Shown one piece after another: positions 1,200 to 61,589 of a stretch of 64,000 bases of DNA. The DNA lies in the IMG/VR virus record IMGVR_UViG_3300032334_002567, positions 186,001 through 250,000 of that record, one strand, 5' to 3'. The position numbers and the translations under genes are program-made. The stretch's first letter is position 1, and every line of letters starts with the position of its first letter. The notes beneath the pieces are model-generated. The model did not search any database. It was given only the letters and a program-made list of their open reading frames with translations, and was not told where the DNA came from.

Positions 1200-1250
1200 T
1201 CGACTAGTTTGTTTCTGCTAAAATCTTCCTCGCAACCCGAGGACGCAGAA

Positions 1251-2258
1251 ATGAATGGAATAAGAATTTTTGGTCTAGGATCAAGCCTCAAATATGCAGA
1301 TAAAATTTCTGGTATTCTCGGTGTAAAAAGAACTCCACATATTGAACAATTTCACGATGACGATGAACCTTACGTTTTATCTCAGGAAAACGTAAGAGGT
1401 TGTGACGTTTTTATTGTTTCTAGTCTGCACTCATGCAATGAGGAAAGACTAGCAGACAAATTTTTAAAATTAATCTTATTTGCACGTTCTTTAAGAGATG
1501 CATCTGCAAAAAGAATAACTTTGGTGGTTCCTTATTTTGCTTTTCAAAGACAAGATAGAAAAACAGAAAGCAGAGCACCCGTATACACAAAGTATATTCC
1601 TGAAATAGTAGAAGGATTGCTAAGGCCAGATGATAGAATTTTAACTATGGATGCACACAATTTAAGTGCATACCAGAGCGGCCTCAGGATGATGTTGGAT
1701 CATCTAGAGGCAAAACCACTAATAGCAGACTGGTTTAGTCGTTCTGTTAATAGACTTTGGCCCGATCTAAATTTAGATAATTTGTGTTTTGCCTCCCCAG
1801 ATGAAGGTGGAGTTAAGCGAATAGGCTATTATCGGAAAAAAGTTCAATCAATAATGGGAATTTCAATTTCCACTGCATCTGTCTACAAAACGCACGAAGG
1901 AAGAGACATACATGCCCACGGAGTCATGGGCAACGTTGAAGGAAAAGATATTTTTCTTGGTGACGACATGATTTCTTCCGGTACCACCCTTGTAAAGGCT
2001 TATGACGCACTTTCAAGCATGGGTGGAAATGTGAGGGCTGCTATTGCGACACATGGCCTTTTTGTGGGTAAATCAAATGAAAATATTAAGTATCTGATTG
2101 ATAAAGGTGTCAGGATAATAACCACAGATACCATCCAAATAAATCGATTAAATGAAAATTTAAAAGAAAAAGTAATCACAATTCCAACATATGGGTTATT
2201 CGCAGAAGCAATTAGGTGTGTTCACAATGAAGAATCCATTAGTAGATTAATTTCTTGA
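1251..2258 (+). CDS. prs: Ribose-phosphate pyrophosphokinase (PRPP synthetase family)
   Basis: ENVRGCDVFIV, VPYFAFQRQDRK, SPDEGG, DDMISSGTTL and ATHGLF motifs; start re-set to MNGIR. Confidence 0.9.
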   Translation: MNGIRIFGLGSSLKYADKISGILGVKRTPHIEQFHDDDEPYVLSQENVRGCDVFIVSSLHSCNEERLADKFLKLILFARSLRDASAKRITLVVPYFAFQRQDRKTESRAPVYTKYIPEIVEGLLRPDDRILTMDAHNLSAYQSGLRMMLDHLEAKPLIADWFSRSVNRLWPDLNLDNLCFASPDEGGVKRIGYYRKKVQSIMGISISTASVYKTHEGRDIHAHGVMGNVEGKDIFLGDDMISSGTTLVKAYDALSSMGGNVRAAIATHGLFVGKSNENIKYLIDKGVRIITTDTIQINRLNENLKEKVITIPTYGLFAEAIRCVHNEESISRLIS

Positions 2259-4323: not shown

Positions 4324-4725
4324 ATGACAGTTTCTAAGGAAATCAATAGTCTTACGAAGGGCTTCCAGAAGTTTTTGAAGACCCTTGTTGCTTCTTCGAC
4401 AACTAGTGTCAAGACCAAAAAGGGCACTAAAGCCAAGGCCAAGGTTGTCAAGGTCAAGGCAAAGAGAACGAAGAGAGTCGCTGGTGAAGTTGGCGGTCCA
4501 GGCCGTCCTTCTGGTGGCTTGAAGGAAAAGTTGGTTGATATTATTAAGGATGGTCCGATGACCGAGCAGGATATTGCTAAGAAGCTCCTGTCGGATAAGG
4601 AAAAGTATGGTTGGAATGAGAACGAGAGCACTCTCTATCAGACGCTTCGCAAGTGTGTCAAGGAAAAGCTTCTTGTTGAAGGCGATGATCGTGATAGGAA
4701 AACCAAGACCTATCAGGTCGCCTGA
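4324..4725 (+). CDS. Lys-rich basic protein with probable C-terminal winged-helix (DNA-binding)
   Basis: K-rich N-half; GPMTEQDIAKKL...LYQTLRKCVKEKLL...TYQV pattern; biased codon use. Confidence 0.6.
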   Translation: MTVSKEINSLTKGFQKFLKTLVASSTTSVKTKKGTKAKAKVVKVKAKRTKRVAGEVGGPGRPSGGLKEKLVDIIKDGPMTEQDIAKKLLSDKEKYGWNENESTLYQTLRKCVKEKLLVEGDDRDRKTKTYQVA

Positions 4726-4775
4726 TTTTTGTCCTTTAGAATCCCCATTACGGGGTAGAAAAGTGAGTTGTGTAA

Positions 4776-5174
4776 ATGTCTGCTACTAAGTCCGCTGCCG
4801 CCCCTACCAAGGCCGGTGTTGCTCGTGAGTTTATGAAGAAGATCGGTGCCCTCACCAAAAACCCACCAGAAGGTTGGTTGAAAAAGGTTGAAGATCACCT
4901 CAAGGAAAAGGGTTTTACTCTCGCCAAGTCCTCCGATGTGCAGATCTACACGATTCGAAGCAAGGCGATGGGGAAAACCAAGAAGGCGGCTAAGAAGAGT
5001 GCCGTTCCTAGCAAAGGCAAGGGGAAGATCAAGTCTAAGCCCAAGGCCCAGCACGGAACGATCCACACCTTTTCTGTAGATGATCTCGCTTCTGCAAAGA
5101 AGTACGCTGATGGTGCTGGCGGTGTTATGAGGAGCATCGAAACCCTCAAGGCTCTGCAACGCCTGATGTCTTGA
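4776..5174 (+). CDS. Lys/Ala-rich histone-like basic protein
   Basis: KTKKAAKKSAVPSKGKGKIKSKPK tract. Confidence 0.6.
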   Translation: MSATKSAAAPTKAGVAREFMKKIGALTKNPPEGWLKKVEDHLKEKGFTLAKSSDVQIYTIRSKAMGKTKKAAKKSAVPSKGKGKIKSKPKAQHGTIHTFSVDDLASAKKYADGAGGVMRSIETLKALQRLMS

Positions 5175-5242: not shown

Positions 5243-6331
5243 CTACTCAAAATTCTCTAAAAAACTAATCCACTTTTTGCCCACCACATTGATGTTGAAA
5301 TTTTCTCTAATATAAGAAGGCCCAGAATTTTTATAGGACAGTTTAATATCAGGGTTTTTTTCTAGGTATTTTATCTTTTCCACAATGTTCTTCGTTGAAC
5401 CCATTAATGGTTCCTCGGCAACTTTATCCTTTAAAAACTTTGAAGGGTTAACGCCTTTTGGAAAATCAACCCAAACAACATTGTTCTCATAGTATTCTGG
5501 CAATGCACCTAACCTATAAGTTACAACCACTAGACCCATAGCAACAGCTTCAGCAACCGCACAAGAAAATGTATCCTGATAAACTAGTTTTCCATGAGTA
5601 AAGCTAGGAAATATAAAATATTCACTTGTAATCAATTCTCTAAAAAGACTTATTTTGTCCAAACCTTTTTCTATGTCAAGATAATCAAAAGACTTAAACT
5701 TTGATTTGTCCCACCCGAGCTCCTCCACAGCTTTTAGAGCAACATCACCGCCCCTAGACCATTGTGCATGAAATATTGTTTTATTAGGAATACGGACCAG
5801 ATTCTCTTTTTCTACTTCTTCAATTATATCTGTCATTACGGGGTTAGGGATCACAACAGAAAACAGTTTTTGCACAACACTTTTAATGCCCCGCTCAGTC
5901 TCTTTTGTGTGCCCTAGCTCCCAGTTAGAAACATGAACCATTCCAACATCTAAAGAATTTTCTTTAGCGAATTCAATTAATTCTCTAATTCCATACATCC
6001 AAGCTAAATGGAACCAGTAAATAACCGCTTTTTTAACTTTAAACGGCAAACCTTTGTAACCTTCAAACCACAGGGAGTTTATAAGAATATCAAATTCTTC
6101 GTTTTTGATTTCAGAAAAGTCTAGATTTGTATAGCGAACCCCTCGACAAATTCCTTTTCCACCACACTCTAAAGCGATAGTTACATCATGACCACAAGAG
6201 GCAAGATACTCGGCAATTAAAATACAGCTTGAATCTGTGCCAGAAGAACTTGCACCACCATGCCGAATTGTATCTCCATTTAAAATGTTACTTCTAGGTT
6301 TGTTTCCTACTAATAAGAATAATACCTTCAT
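5243..6331 (-). CDS. GT-B fold glycosyltransferase (GT4-like)
   Basis: YFIFPS...DTFSCAVAEAVAMGLVVVTYRLGALPE. Confidence 0.8.
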   Translation of the reverse strand: MKVLFLLVGNKPRSNILNGDTIRHGGASSSGTDSSCILIAEYLASCGHDVTIALECGGKGICRGVRYTNLDFSEIKNEEFDILINSLWFEGYKGLPFKVKKAVIYWFHLAWMYGIRELIEFAKENSLDVGMVHVSNWELGHTKETERGIKSVVQKLFSVVIPNPVMTDIIEEVEKENLVRIPNKTIFHAQWSRGGDVALKAVEELGWDKSKFKSFDYLDIEKGLDKISLFRELITSEYFIFPSFTHGKLVYQDTFSCAVAEAVAMGLVVVTYRLGALPEYYENNVVWVDFPKGVNPSKFLKDKVAEEPLMGSTKNIVEKIKYLEKNPDIKLSYKNSGPSYIRENFNINVVGKKWISFLENFE

Positions 6332-6344
6332 GCACCTCCATTTG

Positions 6345-6917
6345 CTATTTATTTGATTTTGTTGACTCCATTAGATCCTTAACATTCTCTACACAGAAAC
6401 CATGCTCTCCACGTTCAATAAATTCGTATATAACGCCTGTTAATTCGCTAGGCTTGGTAAACACTTGAGTTAGACCGGGACATGTCAATGGAGCTTCTGA
6501 GGCAAATTCTGCGTATCCTTTTTCTTTCCATTCTTTCATTGTCTTTTCAACGCTCTCTACCTGATATGCTAAATGATGTATTCCTCCGACTCCATCTCTT
6601 CTATCAACCCATTTTCCAACGATAGAATCAGGTGTCCCATCTGATACGAATATCTCTGGTGGGAGGTGGAATTCAGCAAATAAGCTTGAGTCTATTTCTA
6701 ATTCATTAAAAGAGTCCCCAACATATTGTCGAATCAGCCAATGAAGCTTTTTAACTTTTGGTTTTTCTGAAGGTTCTAGTGCAATGCACTTGGCAGTGGT
6801 TCCGTCCGCAAAATTAATGTCAAATTCTGTTTGTACCCTATACCCAAGAGCATTCATAAAAAATTGAGCTGTCTTTTTGCGATCTTTTACCCTGTAAGCG
6901 ATGTGGTCTAGACGCAT
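6345..6917 (-). CDS. VOC-family metalloenzyme resembling the HPPD C-terminal domain
   Basis: LDHIAY, GIHHLAY, QVFTKP, YEFIER (His/His/Glu metal triad). Confidence 0.75.
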   Translation of the reverse strand: MRLDHIAYRVKDRKKTAQFFMNALGYRVQTEFDINFADGTTAKCIALEPSEKPKVKKLHWLIRQYVGDSFNELEIDSSLFAEFHLPPEIFVSDGTPDSIVGKWVDRRDGVGGIHHLAYQVESVEKTMKEWKEKGYAEFASEAPLTCPGLTQVFTKPSELTGVIYEFIERGEHGFCVENVKDLMESTKSNK

Positions 6918-7154: not shown

Positions 7155-7826
7155 TTAAATTTTGATTGGCTTTTTTAACTGTGACTGCCAAAATTCTAGG
7201 TCCCGAGTATAGGTGTCCCCAATATCTGTCTTGTTTAAGTGAACCTGAATGGCCCCGAGGGGATATACGACATATTTTTGATTTAGAGACCGTGATAAAC
7301 AGCAGTCATAATGCATCGTAGGATTTATATTTAATAAAATATCAAATGCACGATAATTAAGAATAAATGCATGAGAGCAAACAGTAACAGAAGCTTTAAC
7401 TAAATTGGGTGTAATTAGGTCTAAACTCTCATCTGCTATTGTTGCCCCTAAAAATAATATTTCCCAATCTTTAATTTTTGAAATTTGTTCAATAGCAGCT
7501 TCTGTTGGATTTAATGGTGGTTGATTGTCTGCGTAAATTCTACAATCGTCTTCAAGCACTAAGATATTATTCATACCTTGTGCCTTAGCTTTTCTTACTA
7601 TCTCCATATGAGCAGCGGCATTACCAGCACTATACTGCTCAATTTTGTACCCCCCGTCAGCGAGTGGCAAATATCCTAGCTCTGCTGGCGTTTTTCCGTC
7701 TATACGTACAACTTTGGACTCTAAATTAAGTTCTTTTAAGTGTGCTAGTATAGCACTATTTTTATCTGTTCGATGTGGTAAATTTATATAAAATATACAA
7801 TCAACAAAATCTATGAGTTTAAACAT
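7155..7826 (-). CDS. Glycosyltransferase family 25-like
   Basis: YINLPHRTD, LVLEDD, LFLG, CSHAF; start re-set to 7826 because the longer ORF overlaps the tRNA. Confidence 0.8.
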   Translation of the reverse strand: MFKLIDFVDCIFYINLPHRTDKNSAILAHLKELNLESKVVRIDGKTPAELGYLPLADGGYKIEQYSAGNAAAHMEIVRKAKAQGMNNILVLEDDCRIYADNQPPLNPTEAAIEQISKIKDWEILFLGATIADESLDLITPNLVKASVTVCSHAFILNYRAFDILLNINPTMHYDCCLSRSLNQKYVVYPLGAIQVHLNKTDIGDTYTRDLEFWQSQLKKPIKI

Positions 7827-7849
7827 TTCAAACAAGAGCAACTGAAAAA

Positions 7850-7923
7850 TGGGCCATCTAGGACTTGAACCTAGGACTTCCAAATTATGAGTTTGGCACT
7901 CTAACCAGCTGAGTTAATGGCCC
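7850..7923 (-). tRNA. tRNA-Ile2 (anticodon CAU, lysidine type); no encoded CCA
   Basis: Full cloverleaf GGGCCAT...ATGGCCC-A; anticodon loop CTCATAA; C4-G69 and C5-G68 TilS determinants; directly downstream of tilS. Confidence 0.9.
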
Positions 7924-7947
7924 CTTGTTCAGTTGCTCTTGCACATC

Positions 7948-8592
7948 TCACTTCTGCCTATTTGCTTCTAAAGTTTTCTCAATTTTTCTTTTCGCAAATT
8001 TTTCTAACGAAAGTTTTTGCGAATTCATTTCTGGGATAATATTTTTTCGAATCCAATTTCTGCGACTCCCTTTGATCACAGAATTGCTTTCGTCTTCAAC
8101 AACATAACACATCCATTTGTTTCGATCAAGGTACTGTTCAAAATCTTTTTTTGTTGAAAGTAAAAATGGGTGAATAATTTGATAGTTTTGAAAATAGCTA
8201 GTTAATTCAAACGGCACATGATTAGGATGCCCTCTAAAACAATTGAGAAGGTAATTCTCTACCCAGTCATTAAGATGATGAGCGGTAATTACTTTTCCTC
8301 CACCAGCGGCTTCTTCATAGAAATTAAGCCGTGCGTTTCTGCATTCTGCTTCTGTTTTTAAATTAGACCCTACAGAACTGATGCCCGCACAATTTAATTT
8401 TTGGCATAGTTCCTTAAATCTAAATTCCATTTTATGGTTTTGTTCCCGCAAATTATGATTAAAGTGCAGTGGTGTAATGTTGTAGCCCTTGCTTTTGAGC
8501 CAAAATAGGGCTGCAACACTGTCTACACCCATAGAAACCGCCAGATAGTAGTGCTGGTCTTTTGGTGCGAGTTGTTTGATGATTCTGATCAT
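7948..8592 (-). CDS. tilS: tRNA(Ile)-lysidine synthase, minimal catalytic-domain-only form
   Basis: AVSMGVDS PP-loop, HFNHNLR, EAECRNAR, TAHHLND, EDESN and RNWIR motifs. Confidence 0.9.
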   Translation of the reverse strand: MIRIIKQLAPKDQHYYLAVSMGVDSVAALFWLKSKGYNITPLHFNHNLREQNHKMEFRFKELCQKLNCAGISSVGSNLKTEAECRNARLNFYEEAAGGGKVITAHHLNDWVENYLLNCFRGHPNHVPFELTSYFQNYQIIHPFLLSTKKDFEQYLDRNKWMCYVVEDESNSVIKGSRRNWIRKNIIPEMNSQKLSLEKFAKRKIEKTLEANRQK

Positions 8593-8696: not shown

Positions 8697-8771
8697 ACAG
8701 TCAGTGTATCAATGTTGTGTCTTTGCGTCAAGGAAAGACGAATCAATTTTAAAATAATAAGGAGTGTTAAG

Positions 8772-10031
8772 ATGGCTAAAAAATCTTTTTGCTGTGATTT
8801 TTGCGGTAAGTCGAGTCGTTTGGTGGGTACGCTTATTGAATCCCCTACTTTTGAAAAAGAAGTGAACGGCAGATCAAAGGGCAGCAATTTTTATATTTGT
8901 TCGAATTGCGTAGAGCTTGCCCATCTAATGTCTAAGAAATCTGTTAAGTCTGAAGAGGGTGAAGCTGCACCTAAGATGGACATTCCCGATCCACAAAAAA
9001 TTGTCGAATACATGAACCAGTATATCGTTGGGCAAGATAGAGCAAAAAAGACTTTGGCTGTTGCTGTGTGCAATCACTACAAACGTTTATTTGCACAAAA
9101 TGTTGGTGATAAAGAATTAGACGAAACTACCATTGAAAAGTCTAATGTGCTTTTGGTTGGTCCTACTGGTTCTGGCAAGACACTTTTTGCTAGGACTTTG
9201 GCTAAGTATTTAAACGTTCCGTTTGCTATCGGTGATGCTACAACGCTCACAGAGGCGGGTTATGTTGGTGAAGACGTTGAGAACTTAGTTTTGAAGTTAC
9301 TTCATAGTGCCGATTTTGACGTAGAAGCAGCACAACGTGGAATTATTTATCTAGACGAGATTGATAAGATTGGAAGAACTAACCACAATGTCTCTATCAC
9401 CAGAGACGTTTCTGGTGAAGGTGTTCAACAATCTTTGTTAAAGATGATTGAAGGAACAGTTTGCAATGTTCCTCCTGCTGGCGGTCGCAAGCACCCAGAG
9501 CAGCAATTTATTCAAGTTGACACCACCAATATTCTGTTTATTTGTGGTGGAACCTTTGTAGGCTTGGATGACATTATTAAGAAAAGGCTTTGCAAAAAGT
9601 CTATCGGCTTTAATAAGGCCGAAGAAAAAGAATTCAACTTTGAAAACGTAATTGAAAGTGATCTTGTAGAGTACGGTTTAATTCCTGAGCTTATTGGTCG
9701 TCTTCCTTGCATCACGCCTTTGAAGGGTTTGGACGTTGAATCTATGGTTCGGGTTCTTTCCGAGCCAAAGAATTCACTGGTAAGGCAATATAAGAAAATC
9801 TTTAAGTGTGACAACGTAAATCTTGAGTTTACGAAAGATGCTTTGGAGGCAATTGCAAAAAGTACGATTGAAAAAGGCACTGGTGCCCGTGGACTCAGAA
9901 GCATGATGGAAAATCTTCTTATGGACTTAATGTTTGAAATTTCAAGTCATGCTGGGGAAACCGTAGTAATCACCGATAGGGTTGTAATTGGTAAGGAACA
10001 GCCTACCTTTGCAAAAAATAAGGCAGCATAA
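8772..10031 (+). CDS. clpX: ATP-dependent Clp protease ATP-binding subunit ClpX
   Basis: C4 zinc domain, [31 protein letters not shown] loop, GARGLR; AAGGAG RBS before ATG 8772. Confidence 0.97.
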
Positions 10032-10044
10032 CTACTTTAAAGTT

Positions 10045-10653
10045 ATGTACCAAGTATGCACTTATTTTGACGATTCAACGTGGCTAGAGTTTGGCTCAAA
10101 TTGGCTTAATAAAGCTAAAAGAAACCAGTTTGAAGGCATTGTTCTTGCACATTTTGAAAATGCAAAGAACTTAGAGCGTCTTCAAGACTTTTGCGAGGGT
10201 TCTAGTTTAAGAGTATTGTCTTTGCAAGAAAAAGTAAGCTTTGTTGAAGCCTCTAGATTGGTGTCTGAGAATTTTGATGAAGTTTGTCTTCTAACAAAGC
10301 CCAACATCCTACCAGTCAAAGGTTTGCCTGAGACAAAGGGCGCTATTTGTTCGATTTCTCAAGAAGAAAAATCTTTTTTTGATGTGGTTTCGATAATTAC
10401 CAATATCAAGAATAGGGCCAAAGTTTTTGTGTGTTTAGAGGATTTAAAGTCACGATACGGTAGCATTTTATCTGCTGATTACATATTAGGAACCGCAGAA
10501 TTTTGGAGTGTGTTTTCAGGTCTTCAGAGCTATTTTCTTGAAAAGGGCTTTTTTGAGGATAATTCTGCTGCATCTGCTGGCTGTTCTGATTTATTTTTAA
10601 ATATTTCTTTTTCTCAATTAACTTCTGTTCCGATTGAAGTCATCAAGGATTAA
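10045..10653 (+). CDS. Hypothetical protein
   Basis: ORF between clpX and the GGCT gene. Confidence 0.6.
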   Translation: MYQVCTYFDDSTWLEFGSNWLNKAKRNQFEGIVLAHFENAKNLERLQDFCEGSSLRVLSLQEKVSFVEASRLVSENFDEVCLLTKPNILPVKGLPETKGAICSISQEEKSFFDVVSIITNIKNRAKVFVCLEDLKSRYGSILSADYILGTAEFWSVFSGLQSYFLEKGFFEDNSAASAGCSDLFLNISFSQLTSVPIEVIKD

Positions 10654-11063
10654 TGAGCAACTTAATTTTCGTATATGGAACCTTGAAAAGCGGTCATGTT
10701 AGAAACAGCTTTTTAAGGGGCCAAAAGTTTATAGGTGTCGCCTACACAGAGCCTAATTATAAGATTTATAGGCATGGTAGCTATCCTGCTTTGGTTGAAG
10801 ACCCCAATGGATCAGAAATATATGGGGAATTATACGAAGTAGATGATAATTGCTTAATTGAATTAGATAAAATAGAAGGTGTGGATGTTGGTTTATTTAC
10901 AAAAAAAACAATTAAATTGAATGGATATCATCTTTTTTCTTTGCCAGTTGAAAAAAATGTCAATCAAATGCTTTTTTCTAAATCAGCATTGTGTTACTTC
11001 TTCCTAAATAGAGATAGACTTGTTGGCTGCAAGGATTGTGGTCAAAACTGGACAATAAATTAG
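10653..11063 (+). CDS. Gamma-glutamylcyclotransferase (AIG2-like)
   Basis: IFVYGTLKSG, YPAL, GELYEV, LDKIEG. Confidence 0.9.
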   Translation: MSNLIFVYGTLKSGHVRNSFLRGQKFIGVAYTEPNYKIYRHGSYPALVEDPNGSEIYGELYEVDDNCLIELDKIEGVDVGLFTKKTIKLNGYHLFSLPVEKNVNQMLFSKSALCYFFLNRDRLVGCKDCGQNWTIN

Positions 11064-11510: not shown

Positions 11511-12389
11511 ATGACTGATAGAATTCTAAACGCATCTAATTATCTTTCTAGGGTTTTTGAGCACCCAGATTTTCAAAATCCTAAAAAATCAATTGAGATA
11601 ACTAAAGACATAGATTTTGAATTGCGACCAAATTCTATGCTTTGCTATGATTCTCCCCTTTTATCTTTTGAGCAAGAGCAACATCTTTTTAGAAAGATGA
11701 ATTATTTTAAATATAAAGCAAAGACCTTGCTAAAAAACAATCAAAAGGTTTCAACTAGAAGATTGATTAAAATAGAAGATTTGATTGCTAGGAGTAAGAA
11801 GGTTAGAAACCAAATAGCAGAATCTAATTTTCGTTTAGCAACTCAACTGCTGAGATGTGACATTTCTTTTTATCAGCAGAATAGCTTGGTTGATTCTTTG
11901 TTGTCAGATGCTTATTTTGATGTTTTAAAGGCAGTAGATTACTTTAATTGGACTTTGGGTAATAAATTCAGCACTTATGCAACTTGGGTTTTGAAAAAGA
12001 ACTTTTTTCGTGATTCTAAAGACAAAAAGAAACATGCTGACAAAACTATGCGATTAGATGACATAAGCCTTAACATTGAAGAATCTACTGGAAGTCTTAC
12101 AGAAGACGAGCTTCAATACTCAAGTCAAAAAAAGCTGGTGCAGAGTTTGCTTCAGCTATTGGGAAATGGAGACGGATCTACTGATAATCGAAGACAGGTT
12201 TTTGTGCTTGAAAATTACTTTGGATTGAATGGTTATGAAGAGCAAACTTTAGAGAAAATAAGTCTTAAATTAGGAGTTACCAAAGAGAGGGTAAGGCAGC
12301 TTAAGGAAAAAGGGCTAGAATGGATAAGATTTAAAGTAAAACAAATGAAAATAGATCAGGATATTGGATTAGAAAGTTTTCGTTACTAA
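11511..12389 (+). CDS. RNA polymerase sigma-70 family factor
   Basis: PLLSFEQE (1.2), ESNFRL, GNKFSTYATW (2.3-2.4), TLEKISLKLGVTKERVRQL (4.2). Confidence 0.92.
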   Translation: MTDRILNASNYLSRVFEHPDFQNPKKSIEITKDIDFELRPNSMLCYDSPLLSFEQEQHLFRKMNYFKYKAKTLLKNNQKVSTRRLIKIEDLIARSKKVRNQIAESNFRLATQLLRCDISFYQQNSLVDSLLSDAYFDVLKAVDYFNWTLGNKFSTYATWVLKKNFFRDSKDKKKHADKTMRLDDISLNIEESTGSLTEDELQYSSQKKLVQSLLQLLGNGDGSTDNRRQVFVLENYFGLNGYEEQTLEKISLKLGVTKERVRQLKEKGLEWIRFKVKQMKIDQDIGLESFRY

Positions 12390-12922: not shown

Positions 12923-13837
12923 ATGGCCCGTGCTAAGAAGACTACCCCTGTTGCTGCTGTTGTCTCGACTCCTTCTTCCGCTAACGTCTTGAGTTCTTCG
13001 GATGTTCTTAAGAAGCTGGCTAATGTTGGCGTTGCTCCTGCCCCCAAGAGTACCAAGCCCGACCGCTGGGAGCTTCCTCTTGATGATAAGACAACCGTTG
13101 CCGCTACCCAGTGGGTTGCTGCCAAGACGGTTTGCGATGCCGTAGAGGCCCGTGTCGAGAATACCAAGGCACAGATTGTTGACTATGCTGTTGGCAAGTT
13201 GGCCGAGAAGTTTTTTGACAACAAGAATCGTCCGTCGAACCCTCAAATTGTTTTGAAGAAGGATGATGGTACTCCTGACCATCAGTTCATCTTCATGCTT
13301 ACCGATAGGTTTAAGGTTGAGTTTAAGGACATTCCTGAGGGTGTTCTTCCTGTTGACTTCTTTACTTCACTTTTTGAACAGGTTGGCCTGTCTCCTGAGA
13401 ACGCCAAGAAGATTACTGAGAACGAACTTGACTTCACCCCTGTGACTGGTGTGCGTTCGTTCACAGAGCTTCTGGATGGCCGATTTGGGGCTAACCGAGA
13501 ATGGATTGATTCTACGTCCGAAGAGAAGGCTGCTGGCAGCAAGATGGCCGCTCTTCTCCTTTGGGATGGCACCGGGGCTGCTCCCCAACCGCTTACTCCT
13601 GCTGAACAGGGTATTGTGGTTCGTCGTGACCCCGGTGTTGTTGTAAAGGCTGGCTTCTATGATCGTGTCGCACTTTACTGCACCACGGTTGATCAGATTA
13701 AGGGTGTGTTTTCTATCATTCGGCCTGTGTCTTATCCTTCCTATTGCAAGTTTGCAATGAATGATACTGATACGAGCAAGCTGAACCGCAAGATTGCCGC
13801 AGTCTCCGATATCCTTGGTGTTGGCGGCAAGGAGTGA
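12923..13837 (+). CDS. Hypothetical protein, probably highly expressed early gene
   Basis: GGAG RBS; strong codon bias (AAG, GCT, GGT/GGC; no ATA seen). Confidence 0.8.
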   Translation: MARAKKTTPVAAVVSTPSSANVLSSSDVLKKLANVGVAPAPKSTKPDRWELPLDDKTTVAATQWVAAKTVCDAVEARVENTKAQIVDYAVGKLAEKFFDNKNRPSNPQIVLKKDDGTPDHQFIFMLTDRFKVEFKDIPEGVLPVDFFTSLFEQVGLSPENAKKITENELDFTPVTGVRSFTELLDGRFGANREWIDSTSEEKAAGSKMAALLLWDGTGAAPQPLTPAEQGIVVRRDPGVVVKAGFYDRVALYCTTVDQIKGVFSIIRPVSYPSYCKFAMNDTDTSKLNRKIAAVSDILGVGGKE

Positions 13838-40184: not shown

Positions 40185-41420
40185 ATGAATTTTAAACAAT
40201 GGCTCCTTACAGAAGAGCGTCAATCAATGGGTGCATCTATCCCCATGCCAGATGAAGTACAAATTCTATCCAATCTGTTTAGTAGTTTTGGAGCTAAATT
40301 GTATGCTGTTGGTGGAGCTATAAGAGACTACTTATACCATATATTCCACGATAGACATATTCCTTACAACCCCAAAGACGTAGATTTAACCACAGATCAA
40401 CCACCAGATCAAGTTACAAGAATACTTAGCTCTCCAGCAGCAGTTCAGCATGGGATTAGGGTCTTACCTAAGGGAGAAAGCTTTGGAGTTATCAGTGCTA
40501 TTATAAATGGCAAAGAATTTGAGATCGCAACCTTCCGAACAGAAGTCTATGATGCTGCCACGGGTGATGGCAGAAGACCAGATAGTGTTCAATACAGTAC
40601 AGCCGCTGAAGACGCCAAGCGTAGAGACCTTCACATAAACGCATTGTTCTATGATCTTCATAGCAAAGAAATACATGATTACAATGTAGATGAGAATGGA
40701 GAGGGAGAAGGATTTAAGGACATTAGGAACAAAAAAGTTAGAGTTGTAGGAGATCCTTTTGAGAGATTTAGAGAAGATAAGCTTAGAGTTTTAAGGCTTG
40801 TCAGATTCTTTTGTAGGTTTAATGAGGACGTGATAACCAGTCACTTAGATTCAAGAACATTATCTGCCGTAGATAACTTCAAGGATTTGAAGGGAGTTAG
40901 TGGCGAAAGAATAGCAAATGAATTTATTTCTGGACTTAAGACTTGTAAGAGTACAAAAAACTACATTTTAAGCTTCAAGTCTTTGGGGTTGATACCAACA
41001 ATATTTCCCGGCTTAAATGTTAATACTTCTGAAATGGATGCTATGGACTCTTCAAGAAACTCAATAGCAGTCACTGCTTTTTTACTCAGAGACAATGATA
41101 TAAAAGTTATTAAATCTAAGCTAAATTCACTCAAGTACTCTAACGAATTTATAAACACACTTTCTTTGGTGCTCATGGCAGCTTACAAATTAGATAAGTC
41201 TAATTTTATTCGTTTGTTAAGAATGAGAGATAATCTAAATGATAGCTTAAAAAGTTCGCTTGTTGAATTCGGTAAAATAAGTGGTCTGGAAAGAGAAATG
41301 AGTCATTTTGTACATTACACTCAAGTCACAAAATCAGAAGACTATATGCATCTACAGAATGAAAAAAGAGGAGAGAAGATGAGTGAAGATGAATACGAAA
41401 ATTATAAGGAAAATTCATGA
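40185..41420 (+). CDS. cca: Class II tRNA nucleotidyltransferase (CCA-adding enzyme) with leader MNFKQWLLTEE
   Basis: VGGAIRD, DVD, EIATFR.E, RRDLHINAL, FREDKLRVLR; poly(A) polymerase GRRF signature absent. Confidence 0.88.
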   Translation: MNFKQWLLTEERQSMGASIPMPDEVQILSNLFSSFGAKLYAVGGAIRDYLYHIFHDRHIPYNPKDVDLTTDQPPDQVTRILSSPAAVQHGIRVLPKGESFGVISAIINGKEFEIATFRTEVYDAATGDGRRPDSVQYSTAAEDAKRRDLHINALFYDLHSKEIHDYNVDENGEGEGFKDIRNKKVRVVGDPFERFREDKLRVLRLVRFFCRFNEDVITSHLDSRTLSAVDNFKDLKGVSGERIANEFISGLKTCKSTKNYILSFKSLGLIPTIFPGLNVNTSEMDAMDSSRNSIAVTAFLLRDNDIKVIKSKLNSLKYSNEFINTLSLVLMAAYKLDKSNFIRLLRMRDNLNDSLKSSLVEFGKISGLEREMSHFVHYTQVTKSEDYMHLQNEKRGEKMSEDEYENYKENS

Positions 41421-61245: not shown

Positions 61246-61318
61246 GCGAGTGTAGCTCAGTTGGTAGAGCATTTGATTTCCAATCAAAATGTCGCCGGAT
61301 CGTACCCGGTCACTCGCT
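61246..61318 (+). tRNA. tRNA-Gly (UCC); no encoded CCA
   Basis: Cloverleaf GCGAGTG...CACTCGC-T; anticodon loop TTTCCAA; U73 discriminator; atypical T-loop ATCGTAC. Confidence 0.9.
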
Positions 61319-61589
61319 CTTTTCTTTAAATTTTGTCCAATAACCTTTACCGTTTACAAAATTTTATAAGAGAATTTTAATCTTTATTCGCTCTCATCTT
61401 TAAAAGGCTTAAATCCAACCCTTTTCATATTTTCGTATTCTTCTATATTCTTCCAGACTTCTCTTACTGGCTGGGACATTATTATTGCAATCAATAAGAA
61501 CAATAGTGCCAAAACACAAAATTGCATAGTTTATCTCCTGTGAAAAGTGACGTAAATTATCAAATACAATTGGAAAAATCAATCCTGAA

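What the first reader, a model, noticed from the sequence alone, without database searches (positions are those of the whole stretch)
7850..8592. Self-contained AUA-decoding cassette: minimal TilS directly followed by its tRNA-Ile2
Seen: a 214-aa TilS lacking the C-terminal domains, with SMGVDS in place of SGGxDS, ending 24 nt before a CAU tRNA that has C4-G69/C5-G68. The AT-rich putative late genes use ATA often, whereas I saw no ATA or GGA codons in the genes at 4324 and 12923. The second tRNA reads GGA. Inference: the phage supplies decoding capacity for codons rare in a GC-rich host, timed for late genes.
Basis: partly seen in the sequence, partly recalled or inferred. Interest (0 to 1): 0.66.

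Follow-up and report, generated by a model that had tools for sequence, protein, structure and literature searches.

The report
Phage minimal TilS with its tRNA

Summary
A 214-aa TilS-like ORF (7948-8592, minus strand) ends 24 nt before a CAU tRNA (7850-7923, minus). The tRNA has C4-G69 and C5-G68, and the PP-loop reads SMGVDS.

The protein passes the NCBIfam TilS N-domain cut-off. Its model (pLDDT 94) matches solved TilS structures best, covering only their N-terminal catalytic domain.

It belongs to a family of more than 300 metagenomic clusters of about 212 aa. The Met of S-M-G-x-D-S is invariant in the 121 members aligned.

In 11 of 20 distinct relatives a CAU tRNA follows tilS on the same strand. 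In the four relatives' records where a pattern search found any CAU tRNA, the tilS-linked one was the only one. The tRNAs differ widely in sequence but keep their stems by compensatory changes.

ATA makes up 44% of the phage's Ile codons. tilS itself has none (0 of 13), and its orthologues are depleted (13% against 32% in flanking ORFs).

Replication genes and the terminase use ATA equally. The ATA/GGA-free genes it cited are GC-rich, foreign-looking islands. The host is unknown.

Virus-encoded TilS and phage tRNA-Ile(CAU) are each already known. The conserved pairing, the domain-less SMG enzyme and its ATA avoidance are new details.

The parts
7948..8592 (-). tilS-like gene. 214 aa, TilS N-terminal (PP-loop ATP pyrophosphatase) domain only, PP-loop S-M-G-V-D-S, no ATA among its 13 Ile codons.
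   Evidence: TIGR02432 98.7 bits (cut-off 93.6) and PF01171 E 3e-25. Family profile aligns to E. coli TilS residues 12-202 of 433 and A. aeolicus 19-223 of 317. AF2 pLDDT 94.3. Foldseek top hits are TilS 2e21, 1wy5, 1ni5, 3a2k with TMq 0.72-0.78. M21 invariant in 121 relatives. Codon counts.
7850..7923 (-). tRNA with anticodon CAU, inferred to be tRNA-Ile2 (lysidine substrate). Elongator-type, with C4-G69, C5-G68, G3-C70, A73 and loop CUCAUAA. No encoded CCA.
   Evidence: ARAGORN. RF00005 70.2 bits. It is the only CAU tRNA in the 381-kb record. Eleven tilS-linked homologous-position tRNAs show 97.8% paired cells and 16 of 21 pairs with compensatory change.
7928..7942 (-). 5' arm of a 15-bp leader-trailer stem that encloses the tRNA. 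It lies in the 24-nt tilS-tRNA spacer.
   Evidence: flank duplex dG -26.6 kcal/mol against a genome null of -10.3 +/- 4.3. None of the other 9 tRNAs of the genome has such a stem.
7832..7846 (-). 3' arm of the leader-trailer stem. It ends 5 nt before the ATG (7826) of the next gene.
   Evidence: Comparable stems with different sequence occur in L020 (18 bp) and L021; marginal ones in L007 and L030.
8703..8731 (-). Sigma-70-like promoter match (TTGACG, 17 nt, TACACT, with TG) in the divergent tilS/clpX intergenic region. It is a candidate promoter for a tilS-tRNA transcript.
   Evidence: The number of such matches in the region is no more than shuffles give, so this is weak evidence. No terminator-like site lies on the minus strand between tilS and the tRNA.
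61246..61319 (+). tRNA-Gly(UCC). It belongs to the phage's dispersed set of 10 tRNAs, not to the cassette.
40185..41420 (+). PolyA_pol-family (CCA-adding-enzyme-like) nucleotidyltransferase. It may mature the phage tRNAs that lack an encoded CCA.
   Evidence: PF01743 83.8 bits. A second copy lies at genome position 340477-341964.

Best explanation
The locus is a phage-borne AUA-decoding module.

Proposed mechanism (inferred):
- tilS and the CAU tRNA are probably made as one transcript from the tilS/clpX intergenic region.
- The tRNA is cut out by host RNases. In this phage a 15-bp leader-trailer stem marks it.
- It receives CCA from a host or phage enzyme.
- The 214-aa enzyme, which is the catalytic core of lysidine synthetase, uses ATP and lysine to turn C34 into lysidine.
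- That change switches the tRNA from AUG/Met to AUA/Ile, with charging by the host IleRS.

The purpose is to raise AUA-reading capacity for a genome in which ATA is the most used Ile codon. Bringing the enzyme together with the tRNA ensures the extra tRNA is actually converted and does not wait on the host TilS, which can be very slow in bacteria that rarely use AUA. tilS carries no ATA itself, so it can be translated before that capacity exists.

Shown here: the gene pair, its fold and family, its conservation, the codon statistics.
Inferred: lysidine as the product, this tRNA as the substrate, co-transcription, and the benefit to the phage.
For: Enzyme identity:
- The window protein passes the TIGR02432 cut-off, and that model is the top match for all 24 scanned relatives.
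- The closest folds are the three solved TilS enzymes.
- TilS motifs are kept: AHHLND..E, HPFL, EDESN, RRNWxR.
- More than 300 clusters share 58-95% identity, with 41 invariant columns in 121 sequences, so selection is strong.

Linkage:
- A CAU tRNA lies on the same strand, from 84 nt inside the called tilS ORF to 616 nt after its stop, in 11 of 20 distinct lineages. Seven lie within 25 nt of the stop or overlap it.
- The window's record has one CAU tRNA. In the four relatives' records where the pattern search found a CAU tRNA (one of them 91% complete), it found exactly one, the tilS-linked one.
- The tRNAs are divergent yet structurally intact.

Demand:
- ATA is 44% of Ile codons and 32 per 1000 codons.
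- The tRNA set fits the phage's A-ending codons.

Bootstrap signature:
- tilS has 0 of 13 ATA. It is one of only 2 of 264 AT-rich genes with at least 10 Ile codons that have none.
- In 23 related loci, tilS orthologues have 52/391 ATA against 1065/3292 in their flanks (Fisher P 1.5e-16). AGA and TTA are not depleted.

Literature:
- Phage CAU tRNAs of T4-like phages are lysidine-type tRNA-Ile (PMC1524935). One carries k2C34 in vivo (PMC13191261).
- B. cenocepacia TilS is about 1000-fold less efficient than the E. coli enzyme (PMC12514573, PMC11947777).
Against: - No biochemical or expression data exist for this enzyme or tRNA, and no RNA run holds the locus.
- The first Gly of the universal SGGxDS PP-loop is replaced by Met, and the effect on ATP binding is untested.
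- Both tRNA-recognition domains (CTD1, CTD2) are missing. [quoted passage not shown]
- The Ile2 (rather than Met) identity of the tRNA could not be tested with an isotype model. Plain identity to E. coli ileX against metT favours ileX in 8 of 10 but metT in 2. The 4:69 pair is not conserved across the linked tRNAs.
- Nine of 20 relatives lack the adjacent tRNA. Five such records (24-75% complete) show no CAU tRNA at all, so the enzyme must also be able to work on host tRNA.
- The promoter match is no better than chance.
Confidence: 0.72

Rival explanations
1. The enzyme mainly serves host tRNA. The phage TilS boosts lysidine formation on the host's own tRNA-Ile2, or keeps it going after host shut-off. 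The neighbouring CAU tRNA is an ordinary elongator tRNA-Met, or an optional add-on.
For: Nine of 20 relatives have tilS without an adjacent CAU tRNA, and five such records have none by pattern search. MIJ3/PA5oct-type and 642-kb-phage TilS proteins, also about 200 aa, have no adjacent tRNA. Two linked tRNAs (L006, L017) are slightly closer to E. coli metT than to ileX.
Against: Where the pattern search found a CAU tRNA in a relative's record it found only one, always next to tilS, and the window's record also has a single CAU tRNA, next to tilS. That is hard to explain for a plain Met tRNA. The records without one are incomplete (24-75%). ATG has no synonymous codon, so a Met tRNA gives no codon-bias benefit.
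Confidence: 0.12
2. Counter-defence or tRNA-pool maintenance. The pair replaces host AUA-reading tRNA that is lost during infection through host DNA/RNA degradation or tRNA-targeting defence nucleases. It does not correct a codon-usage mismatch.
For: The phage encodes two CCA-adding-like enzymes. RNA-ligase genes sit two genes upstream of tilS in L006 and L011/L012. Related cassettes are followed by a tmRNA. The literature proposes that phage tRNAs sustain translation as host tRNA decays (PMC13191261, PMC12619734).
Against: No tRNA-targeting nuclease is known for tRNA-Ile2 (from my own knowledge, not checked). The anticodon loop is the ordinary CUCAUAA. The very high ATA use and the fit of the tRNA set to A-ending codons already explain the pair. 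The two ideas are not exclusive.
Confidence: 0.1
3. The protein is a diverged PP-loop enzyme with another activity: a different nucleophile, base or tRNA, or a non-catalytic tRNA binder. The Met in the PP-loop and the loss of both C-terminal domains would mark that change of function.
For: S-M-G-x-D-S is invariant in 121 members, whereas other short phage TilS proteins keep SGG. The TIGR02432 score is only 5 bits over its cut-off. TtuA and NcsA thiolases are the next-best folds.
Against: All other TilS signature motifs are kept, and the closest sequences and folds are TilS, not thiolases. There is no Fe-S cysteine cluster pattern of the TtuA type. Linkage is to a CAU tRNA specifically. From my own knowledge, unchecked: the ATP sulfurylase subunit CysD works with S-I-G-K-D-S, so a hydrophobic residue at that place need not kill a PP-loop.
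Confidence: 0.06

Closest known systems
Bacterial tRNA(Ile)-lysidine synthetase TilS, type I (E. coli, G. kaustophilus; about 430-500 aa) and type II (A. aeolicus, M. smegmatis; about 320 aa)
   Same: Same catalytic N-terminal PP-loop domain by sequence (TIGR02432, PF01171) and by fold (TMq 0.72-0.78). Same signature motifs apart from one PP-loop residue.
   Different: It ends after the start of the linker helix and has neither CTD1 nor CTD2, the domains that read the anticodon stem and the acceptor stem (PMC11947777). The PP-loop is SMGxDS, not SGGxDS. It is encoded by a phage, next to its presumed substrate.
TilS of Pseudomonas jumbo phages MIJ3/PA5oct (PMC6892783) and of 630-640-kb uncultured phages (LR745206, LR756502)
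   Same: Phage-encoded, about 200 aa (203 and 198 aa), so also catalytic-domain-only. Identity to the window protein is 31-33%.
   Different: They keep the canonical SGGxDS and have no tRNA within 2-2.5 kb. In MIJ3 the tRNAs lie between gp228 and gp246 while tilS is gp263. The short architecture was not remarked on in that paper.
Chlorovirus putative lysidine synthase (PMC7589089 / bioRxiv 10.1101/2020.07.06.190819)
   Same: Same proposed logic: an AT-rich virus in which AUA is 12-13 times commoner than in its GC-rich host carries TilS to raise AUA decoding.
   Different: Eukaryotic virus. The enzyme is not described as paired with a dedicated CAU tRNA gene. Not compared by sequence here.
tRNA-Ile(CAU) of T4-like phages (PMC1524935; k2C34 shown for a vibriophage tRNA, PMC13191261)
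   Same: A phage-encoded CAU tRNA that reads AUA after lysidine formation. It is conserved across phages that carry tRNAs.
   Different: Those phages rely on the host TilS. Here the modifying enzyme travels with the tRNA.

Membership tests
TilS (tRNA(Ile)-lysidine synthetase), catalytic N-domain | Sequence match to the curated TilS N-domain model above its cut-off | tested here: met
   TIGR02432 98.7 bits against a cut-off of 93.6. All 24 scanned relatives match it as their top family.
TilS (tRNA(Ile)-lysidine synthetase), catalytic N-domain | PP-loop motif SGGxDS | tested here: not met
   The motif reads S-M-G-V-D-S, and Met is invariant in 121 family members. Ser, the second Gly, Asp and Ser are kept, so this is a conserved variant and not decay.
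TilS (tRNA(Ile)-lysidine synthetase), catalytic N-domain | TilS fold of the N-terminal domain | tested here: met
   AF2 model pLDDT 94.3. The six best Foldseek hits are TilS entries (2e21, 1wy5, 1ni5, 2e89, 3a2k) with TMq 0.72-0.78.
TilS type I / type II architecture | At least one C-terminal tRNA-recognition domain (CTD1; also CTD2 in type I) | tested here: not met
   The protein is 214 aa. The profile aligns only to residues 12-202 of E. coli TilS (433 aa) and 19-223 of A. aeolicus TilS (317 aa). Neighbouring ORFs are ClpX and a glycosyltransferase-like protein, not a split CTD.
TilS (function) | ATP- and lysine-dependent conversion of C34 to lysidine | not testable with these tools
   Needs an enzyme assay or mass spectrometry.
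tRNA-Ile2 (CAU, lysidine-dependent) | Elongator tRNA with anticodon CAU that is not an initiator | tested here: met
   G1-C72 is paired and the anticodon stem is CCAAA/UUUGG, so it lacks the three G-C pairs of initiators.
tRNA-Ile2 (CAU, lysidine-dependent) | E. coli TilS determinants C4-G69 and C5-G68 (against U4-A69 and A5-U68 in tRNA-Met) | tested here: met
   The window tRNA has both, like E. coli ileX and unlike metT. Across the 11 linked tRNAs, 5:68 is C-G in 9, but 4:69 varies (A-U 5, C-G 4, G-C 2). An enzyme without CTD2 is not expected to read these pairs.
tRNA-Ile2 (CAU, lysidine-dependent) | Isotype-specific model score (Ile2 against Met), or charging with Ile | tested here: inconclusive
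   No isotype model is available. Plain identity to ileX against metT is 64.9 against 60.8% for the window tRNA, and is higher to ileX in 8 of 10 linked tRNAs. BLAST against phage and E. coli records was uninformative.
Codon-compensating phage tRNA set | Phage tRNAs read codons used more by the phage than by the host | tested here: inconclusive
   The phage side is clear. The host is unknown. As a proxy, 18 GC-rich imported-looking genes use ATA 12 times, TTA 13 times and AGA 7.5 times less than the rest of the genome.

The most novel reading that the evidence does not exclude
This family is a natural 'type III' lysidine synthetase that has given up both tRNA-recognition domains. Two readings remain open. 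In the first, substrate choice comes from gene linkage rather than protein domains: the tRNA is made on the same transcript and, in some phages, held as a leader-trailer-paired precursor that MetRS cannot charge until C34 is modified. In the second, the enzyme does not discriminate at all and also lysidinylates host tRNA-Met, re-wiring AUG/AUA reading in the infected cell.
Probability: 0.15. Interest if true: 0.8.

Novelty: new variant of a known kind. Interest (0 to 1): 0.55.

Why it matters
TilS researchers still ask how the enzyme tells tRNA-Ile2 from tRNA-Met, which share the CAU anticodon. They assign that task to the C-terminal domains (PMC11947777). A large, strongly conserved natural family with only the catalytic core, often with its presumed substrate encoded next door, gives a small enzyme-tRNA pair to test that question on. 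It would also show that jumbo phages import a codon-reassigning modification step together with the tRNA, not just tRNAs. The ATA-free tilS gene suggests a start-up constraint on such modules. A compact AUA-decoding pair could also help express AT-rich genes in GC-rich laboratory hosts.

Tried and rejected
- Megablast of the locus against phage records found nothing.
- A single-protein scan of IMG/VR for relatives found nothing. The alignment-based scan worked.
- BLAST of the tRNA against E. coli genomes and phage records gave only generic tRNA similarity, with annotations such as Lys, Met, Arg and Trp. It was useless for isotype assignment.
- Host inference from the GC-rich MoxR-like gene gave 55-57% matches in an Acidimicrobiaceae MAG and a Phycisphaerales MAG. 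That is too distant to name a host. Those genomes lack the short TilS; one has only a weak match to its own longer TilS.
- No RNA sequencing run holds the locus. The holders are lake-water and unlabelled metagenomes, so expression timing could not be examined and read laying was not used.
- The early/late codon-class idea was rejected. Replication and packaging genes have the same ATA share. ATA-poor genes are mostly GC-rich islands (MoxR/VWA, DUF2201, ligase, transposase-like), plus a few AT-rich genes of mixed or unknown function.
- The promoter scan was no better than shuffles.
- I found no paper in the library that describes a tilS-tRNA(CAU) gene pair in phages. This is a search of an incomplete library, not proof of absence.
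- The statement that TilS acts on precursor tRNA-Ile2 (Nakanishi et al. 2009, Nature 461:1144) is from my memory. I could not confirm it in the papers read.
- The large protein-representative search, complex prediction and the metagenome-contig scan were not used. The family assignment was not open, and no claim here rests on absence of relatives.

Full report
**Where the window lies.** The window is bases 186001-250000 of a 381,443-bp linear IMG/VR virus record. CheckV estimates it 79% complete, and its GC content is 36.5%. It is a tailed jumbo phage: it encodes a large terminase, a family-B-type DNA polymerase, a DnaB-like helicase and a ribonucleotide reductase. Near-identical DNA occurs only in unlabelled and lake-water metagenomes, and no RNA run holds it.

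**The observation.**
- The ORF at 7948-8592 (minus strand) encodes 214 aa with AVSMGVDS at residues 18-25.
- ARAGORN and Rfam both call a 74-nt tRNA with anticodon CAU at 7850-7923 (minus), scoring 70.2 bits. It starts 24 nt after the tilS stop.
- The acceptor stem is GGGCCAU/AUGGCCC with A73, which gives C4-G69 and C5-G68. E. coli ileX, fetched from the annotated K-12 record, has the same two pairs. metT has U4-A69 and A5-U68.
- The tRNA is not an initiator: 1:72 is paired and the anticodon stem lacks the three G-C pairs. CCA is not templated.
- The second tRNA of the window is Gly(UCC) at 61246-61319.
- The whole record holds 10 tRNAs: Asn-GUU, Trp-CCA, CAU, Gly-UCC, Thr-UGU, Glu-UUC, Gln-UUG, Arg-UCU, Leu-UAA and Leu-CAA.

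**The protein.**
- It matches PF01171 (E 3e-25) and passes the curated cut-off of the TilS N-domain model TIGR02432, at 98.7 against 93.6 bits.
- A profile of the family aligns to residues 12-202 of E. coli TilS (433 aa), 19-223 of A. aeolicus TilS (317 aa) and 13-217 of G. kaustophilus TilS (464 aa). The motifs AHHLND..E, HPFL, EDESN and RRNWxR are retained.
- An AlphaFold model built on 121 sequences has mean pLDDT 94.3. Its best Foldseek matches are the solved TilS structures, with TMq 0.72-0.78 and a TM-score normalised by target length of only 0.38-0.55, because the targets carry extra domains. TtuA thiolases come next.
- The protein is therefore the TilS catalytic domain plus the first part of the linker helix, with neither CTD1 nor CTD2. 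The last 44 residues are strongly basic (pI 11.1; whole protein 9.4).
- Recent work on TilS recognises only type I (NTD+CTD1+CTD2) and type II (NTD+CTD1). [quoted passage not shown]

**The family.**
- The word-based protein search returned 328 clusters at E <= 1e-5. The best 120 are 192-238 aa long and 58-95% identical to the window protein. They sit on contigs up to 490 kb.
- In 121 aligned sequences 41 columns are invariant, among them the Met of S-M-G-x-D-S. The Met is a fixed family trait under selection, not a lesion.
- Other phage TilS proteins are also domain-less but keep SGG: MIJ3/PA5oct (203 aa, AVSGGIDS) and a 642-kb uncultured phage (198 aa, ACSGGVDS). They are 31-33% identical to the window protein and have no tRNA nearby.
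- Phage TilS was first reported for MIJ3 in 2019 (PMC6892783), and a lysidine synthase for 39 of 41 chloroviruses (PMC7589089).

**The linkage.**
- I collected 30 loci, which represent 20 distinct TilS lineages at 95% identity or less. Eleven carry a CAU tRNA on the same strand, from 84 nt inside the called ORF to 616 nt after the stop. Seven of these lie within 25 nt of the stop or overlap it.
- A pattern search of the relatives' whole records found exactly one CAU tRNA in each of four records, always the tilS-linked one; one of these genomes is 459 kb and 91% complete. It found none in six records that lack an adjacent CAU tRNA, one of which (that of L016) instead holds a degenerate tRNA-like element after tilS. 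The five without any such element are 24-75% complete.
- The 11 linked tRNAs are very different in sequence. There are five acceptor-stem types, and some begin with C1-G72. Even so, 97.8% of pair cells are standard pairs and 16 of 21 pairs show changes on both sides. Shifted-register controls fall to 38-49% paired.
- Invariant features beyond the universal tRNA positions are the loop CUCAUAA, G3-C70 and A73. The 4:69 pair is not conserved, which fits an enzyme with no acceptor-stem-reading domain.
- Simple identity to E. coli ileX against metT favours ileX in 8 of 10 linked tRNAs. This is weak evidence. The Ile2 identity therefore rests mainly on the exclusive linkage.

**Codon use.**
- With a home-made gene caller (514 ORFs covering 89% of the genome), ATA is 3640 of 8205 Ile codons (44%), or 32 per 1000 codons. 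AGA is 56% of Arg, TTA 33% of Leu, ACA 40% of Thr and GGA 33% of Gly. Seven of the ten tRNAs read such A-ending codons.
- ATA use is over-dispersed among genes (chi-square 1186 on 448 genes).
- Most ATA-free genes are GC-rich (0.47-0.62) and also lack AGA and TTA. They encode MoxR-type ATPases, VWA proteins, a DUF2201 peptidase, a ligase and a transposase-like protein, many of them at 272-330 kb. They look like imports that have not yet drifted to the phage's composition.
- Replication genes (0.47-0.62), the terminase (0.53) and a tail-like gene (0.57) have the same ATA share. There is no sign of an early/late codon class.

**An unexpected detail.**
- tilS itself has no ATA among its 13 Ile codons (binomial P 5e-4), although it uses AGA (6 of 12) and TTA (6 of 20) freely.
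- Among 264 AT-rich genes with at least 10 Ile codons, only tilS and one unknown ORF have zero ATA. The divergent neighbour clpX has 2 of 32.
- In 23 related loci the tilS orthologues have 52 ATA in 391 Ile codons (13%). Flanking ORFs have 1065 in 3292 (32%). The Fisher test gives an odds ratio of 0.32 and P 1.5e-16. AGA and TTA are not depleted.
- The loci are related, so the P value overstates independence. At 50-70% protein identity, however, synonymous sites are largely randomised.
- The simplest reading is a start-up constraint: the enzyme that creates AUA-reading capacity is kept readable without it.

**Mechanism proposed.**
- tilS and the tRNA are on one strand, 24 nt apart, with no terminator-like site between them. 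A sigma-70-like match lies upstream, but such matches are no more frequent here than in shuffled sequence.
- In this phage the tRNA is enclosed by a perfect 15-bp leader-trailer stem, with arms at 7928-7942 and 7832-7846. The fold has dG -48.4 kcal/mol and z -4.3. The flank duplex is -26.6 against a null of -10.3 +/- 4.3. None of the other nine tRNAs has one.
- Stems of different sequence occur in L020 (18 bp) and L021, marginal ones in L007 and L030, and none in five other relatives. The stem may be a processing site. It may also hold the tRNA as a precursor while C34 is modified; that last idea draws on my recollection that TilS acts on precursor tRNA-Ile2, which I could not confirm in the papers read.
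- The phage has two CCA-adding-like genes and no IleRS. Charging depends on the host, so 'self-contained' is too strong.
- Why carry the enzyme as well as the tRNA? An unmodified CAU tRNA is charged with Met and reads AUG (PMC11301382). Host TilS activity varies about 1000-fold and is lowest in a host that hardly uses AUA (PMC12514573).
- Nine of 20 relatives lack the adjacent tRNA, so the enzyme presumably also accepts host tRNA-Ile2.

**What remains open.** The unknowns are the host (and hence the 'GC-rich host' claim), catalytic activity with the Met-bearing PP-loop, how or whether tRNA-Met is rejected, the timing of expression, and the isotype of the tRNA by a proper model.

**Verdict.** This is a real, conserved phage module. 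It is best classed as a new variant of a known kind: virus-encoded TilS and phage tRNA-Ile(CAU) were each known. The fixed pairing, the catalytic-core-only SMG enzyme family and its ATA avoidance were not found described in the searched literature.

Noticed in passing
window 7832-7846 and 7928-7942: A perfect 15-bp leader-trailer stem encloses the CAU tRNA and is unique among the 10 tRNAs of the genome. Similar stems of other sequence occur in relatives L020 and L021, marginal ones in L007 and L030. It may be a processing site or a precursor-holding structure.
   Followed up: partly
window 40185-41420 (+); genome 340477-341964 (-): Two PolyA_pol-family (CCA-adding-enzyme-like) genes are present. 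None of the checked phage tRNA genes templates CCA. No IleRS (PF00133) is in the record.
   Followed up: partly
window 8772-10031 (+): A ClpX homologue with a zinc finger is transcribed divergently from tilS. It is also unusually poor in ATA (2 of 32 Ile codons).
   Followed up: partly
window 11511-12389 (+): ORF with sigma-70 region 2 and region 4 matches, a likely phage sigma factor. It could define a phage promoter class that I did not try to derive.
   Followed up: no
window 4324-5174 and 12923-13837; genome 272-330 kb (L002, L003, L050): Eighteen GC-rich genes (0.47-0.62) are nearly free of ATA, AGA and TTA. They include MoxR/VWA pairs, a DUF2201 peptidase, a ligase and a transposase-like protein. 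They look like recent imports and give the only, indirect, hint at a GC-richer donor or host.
   Followed up: partly
genome 286108-286725 (L002:12108-12725, +): Unknown 204-aa ORF. It is the only other AT-rich gene with zero ATA (0 of 18 Ile codons) and lies between tRNA-Gln and tRNA-Arg. It has no Pfam match.
   Followed up: no
L015 and L016, 5868-5935: In these relatives the slot 213 nt after tilS holds a 68-nt degenerate tRNA-like sequence. Its T arm is intact, its D arm is short and its anticodon loop has 6 nt. It may be a decayed copy of the CAU tRNA.
   Followed up: no
L022, L023, L034 (tmRNA at 6201-6556 of L022); L016 375-734: Related phages encode tmRNAs (tags GETQLALAA and GTVNYAMAA). 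In L022-type phages the order is tilS, tRNA(CAU), tmRNA within about 1 kb.
   Followed up: no
L006 2611-3249; L011 2664-3302: An RNA-ligase-family gene sits two genes upstream of tilS in two relatives. This hints at a tRNA repair or maturation neighbourhood.
   Followed up: no
window 1209-2258, 5243-6331, 6345-6917, 7155-7826, 10653-11063: The neighbourhood of the cassette is auxiliary metabolism: PRPP synthetase, two glycosyltransferase-like genes, a glyoxalase-fold protein and a gamma-glutamyl cyclotransferase-like protein.
   Followed up: partly
genome 348024-361238 (+): A single 4,403-aa ORF with a high ATA share (204 of 333 Ile codons). It was not annotated.
   Followed up: no
whole genome: 43% of ATG-start genes have a GGAG/GAGG/AGGA core at -18 to -5, against 6.6% of random windows. 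The phage therefore relies on Shine-Dalgarno initiation, a weak argument against a Bacteroidota host.
   Followed up: no
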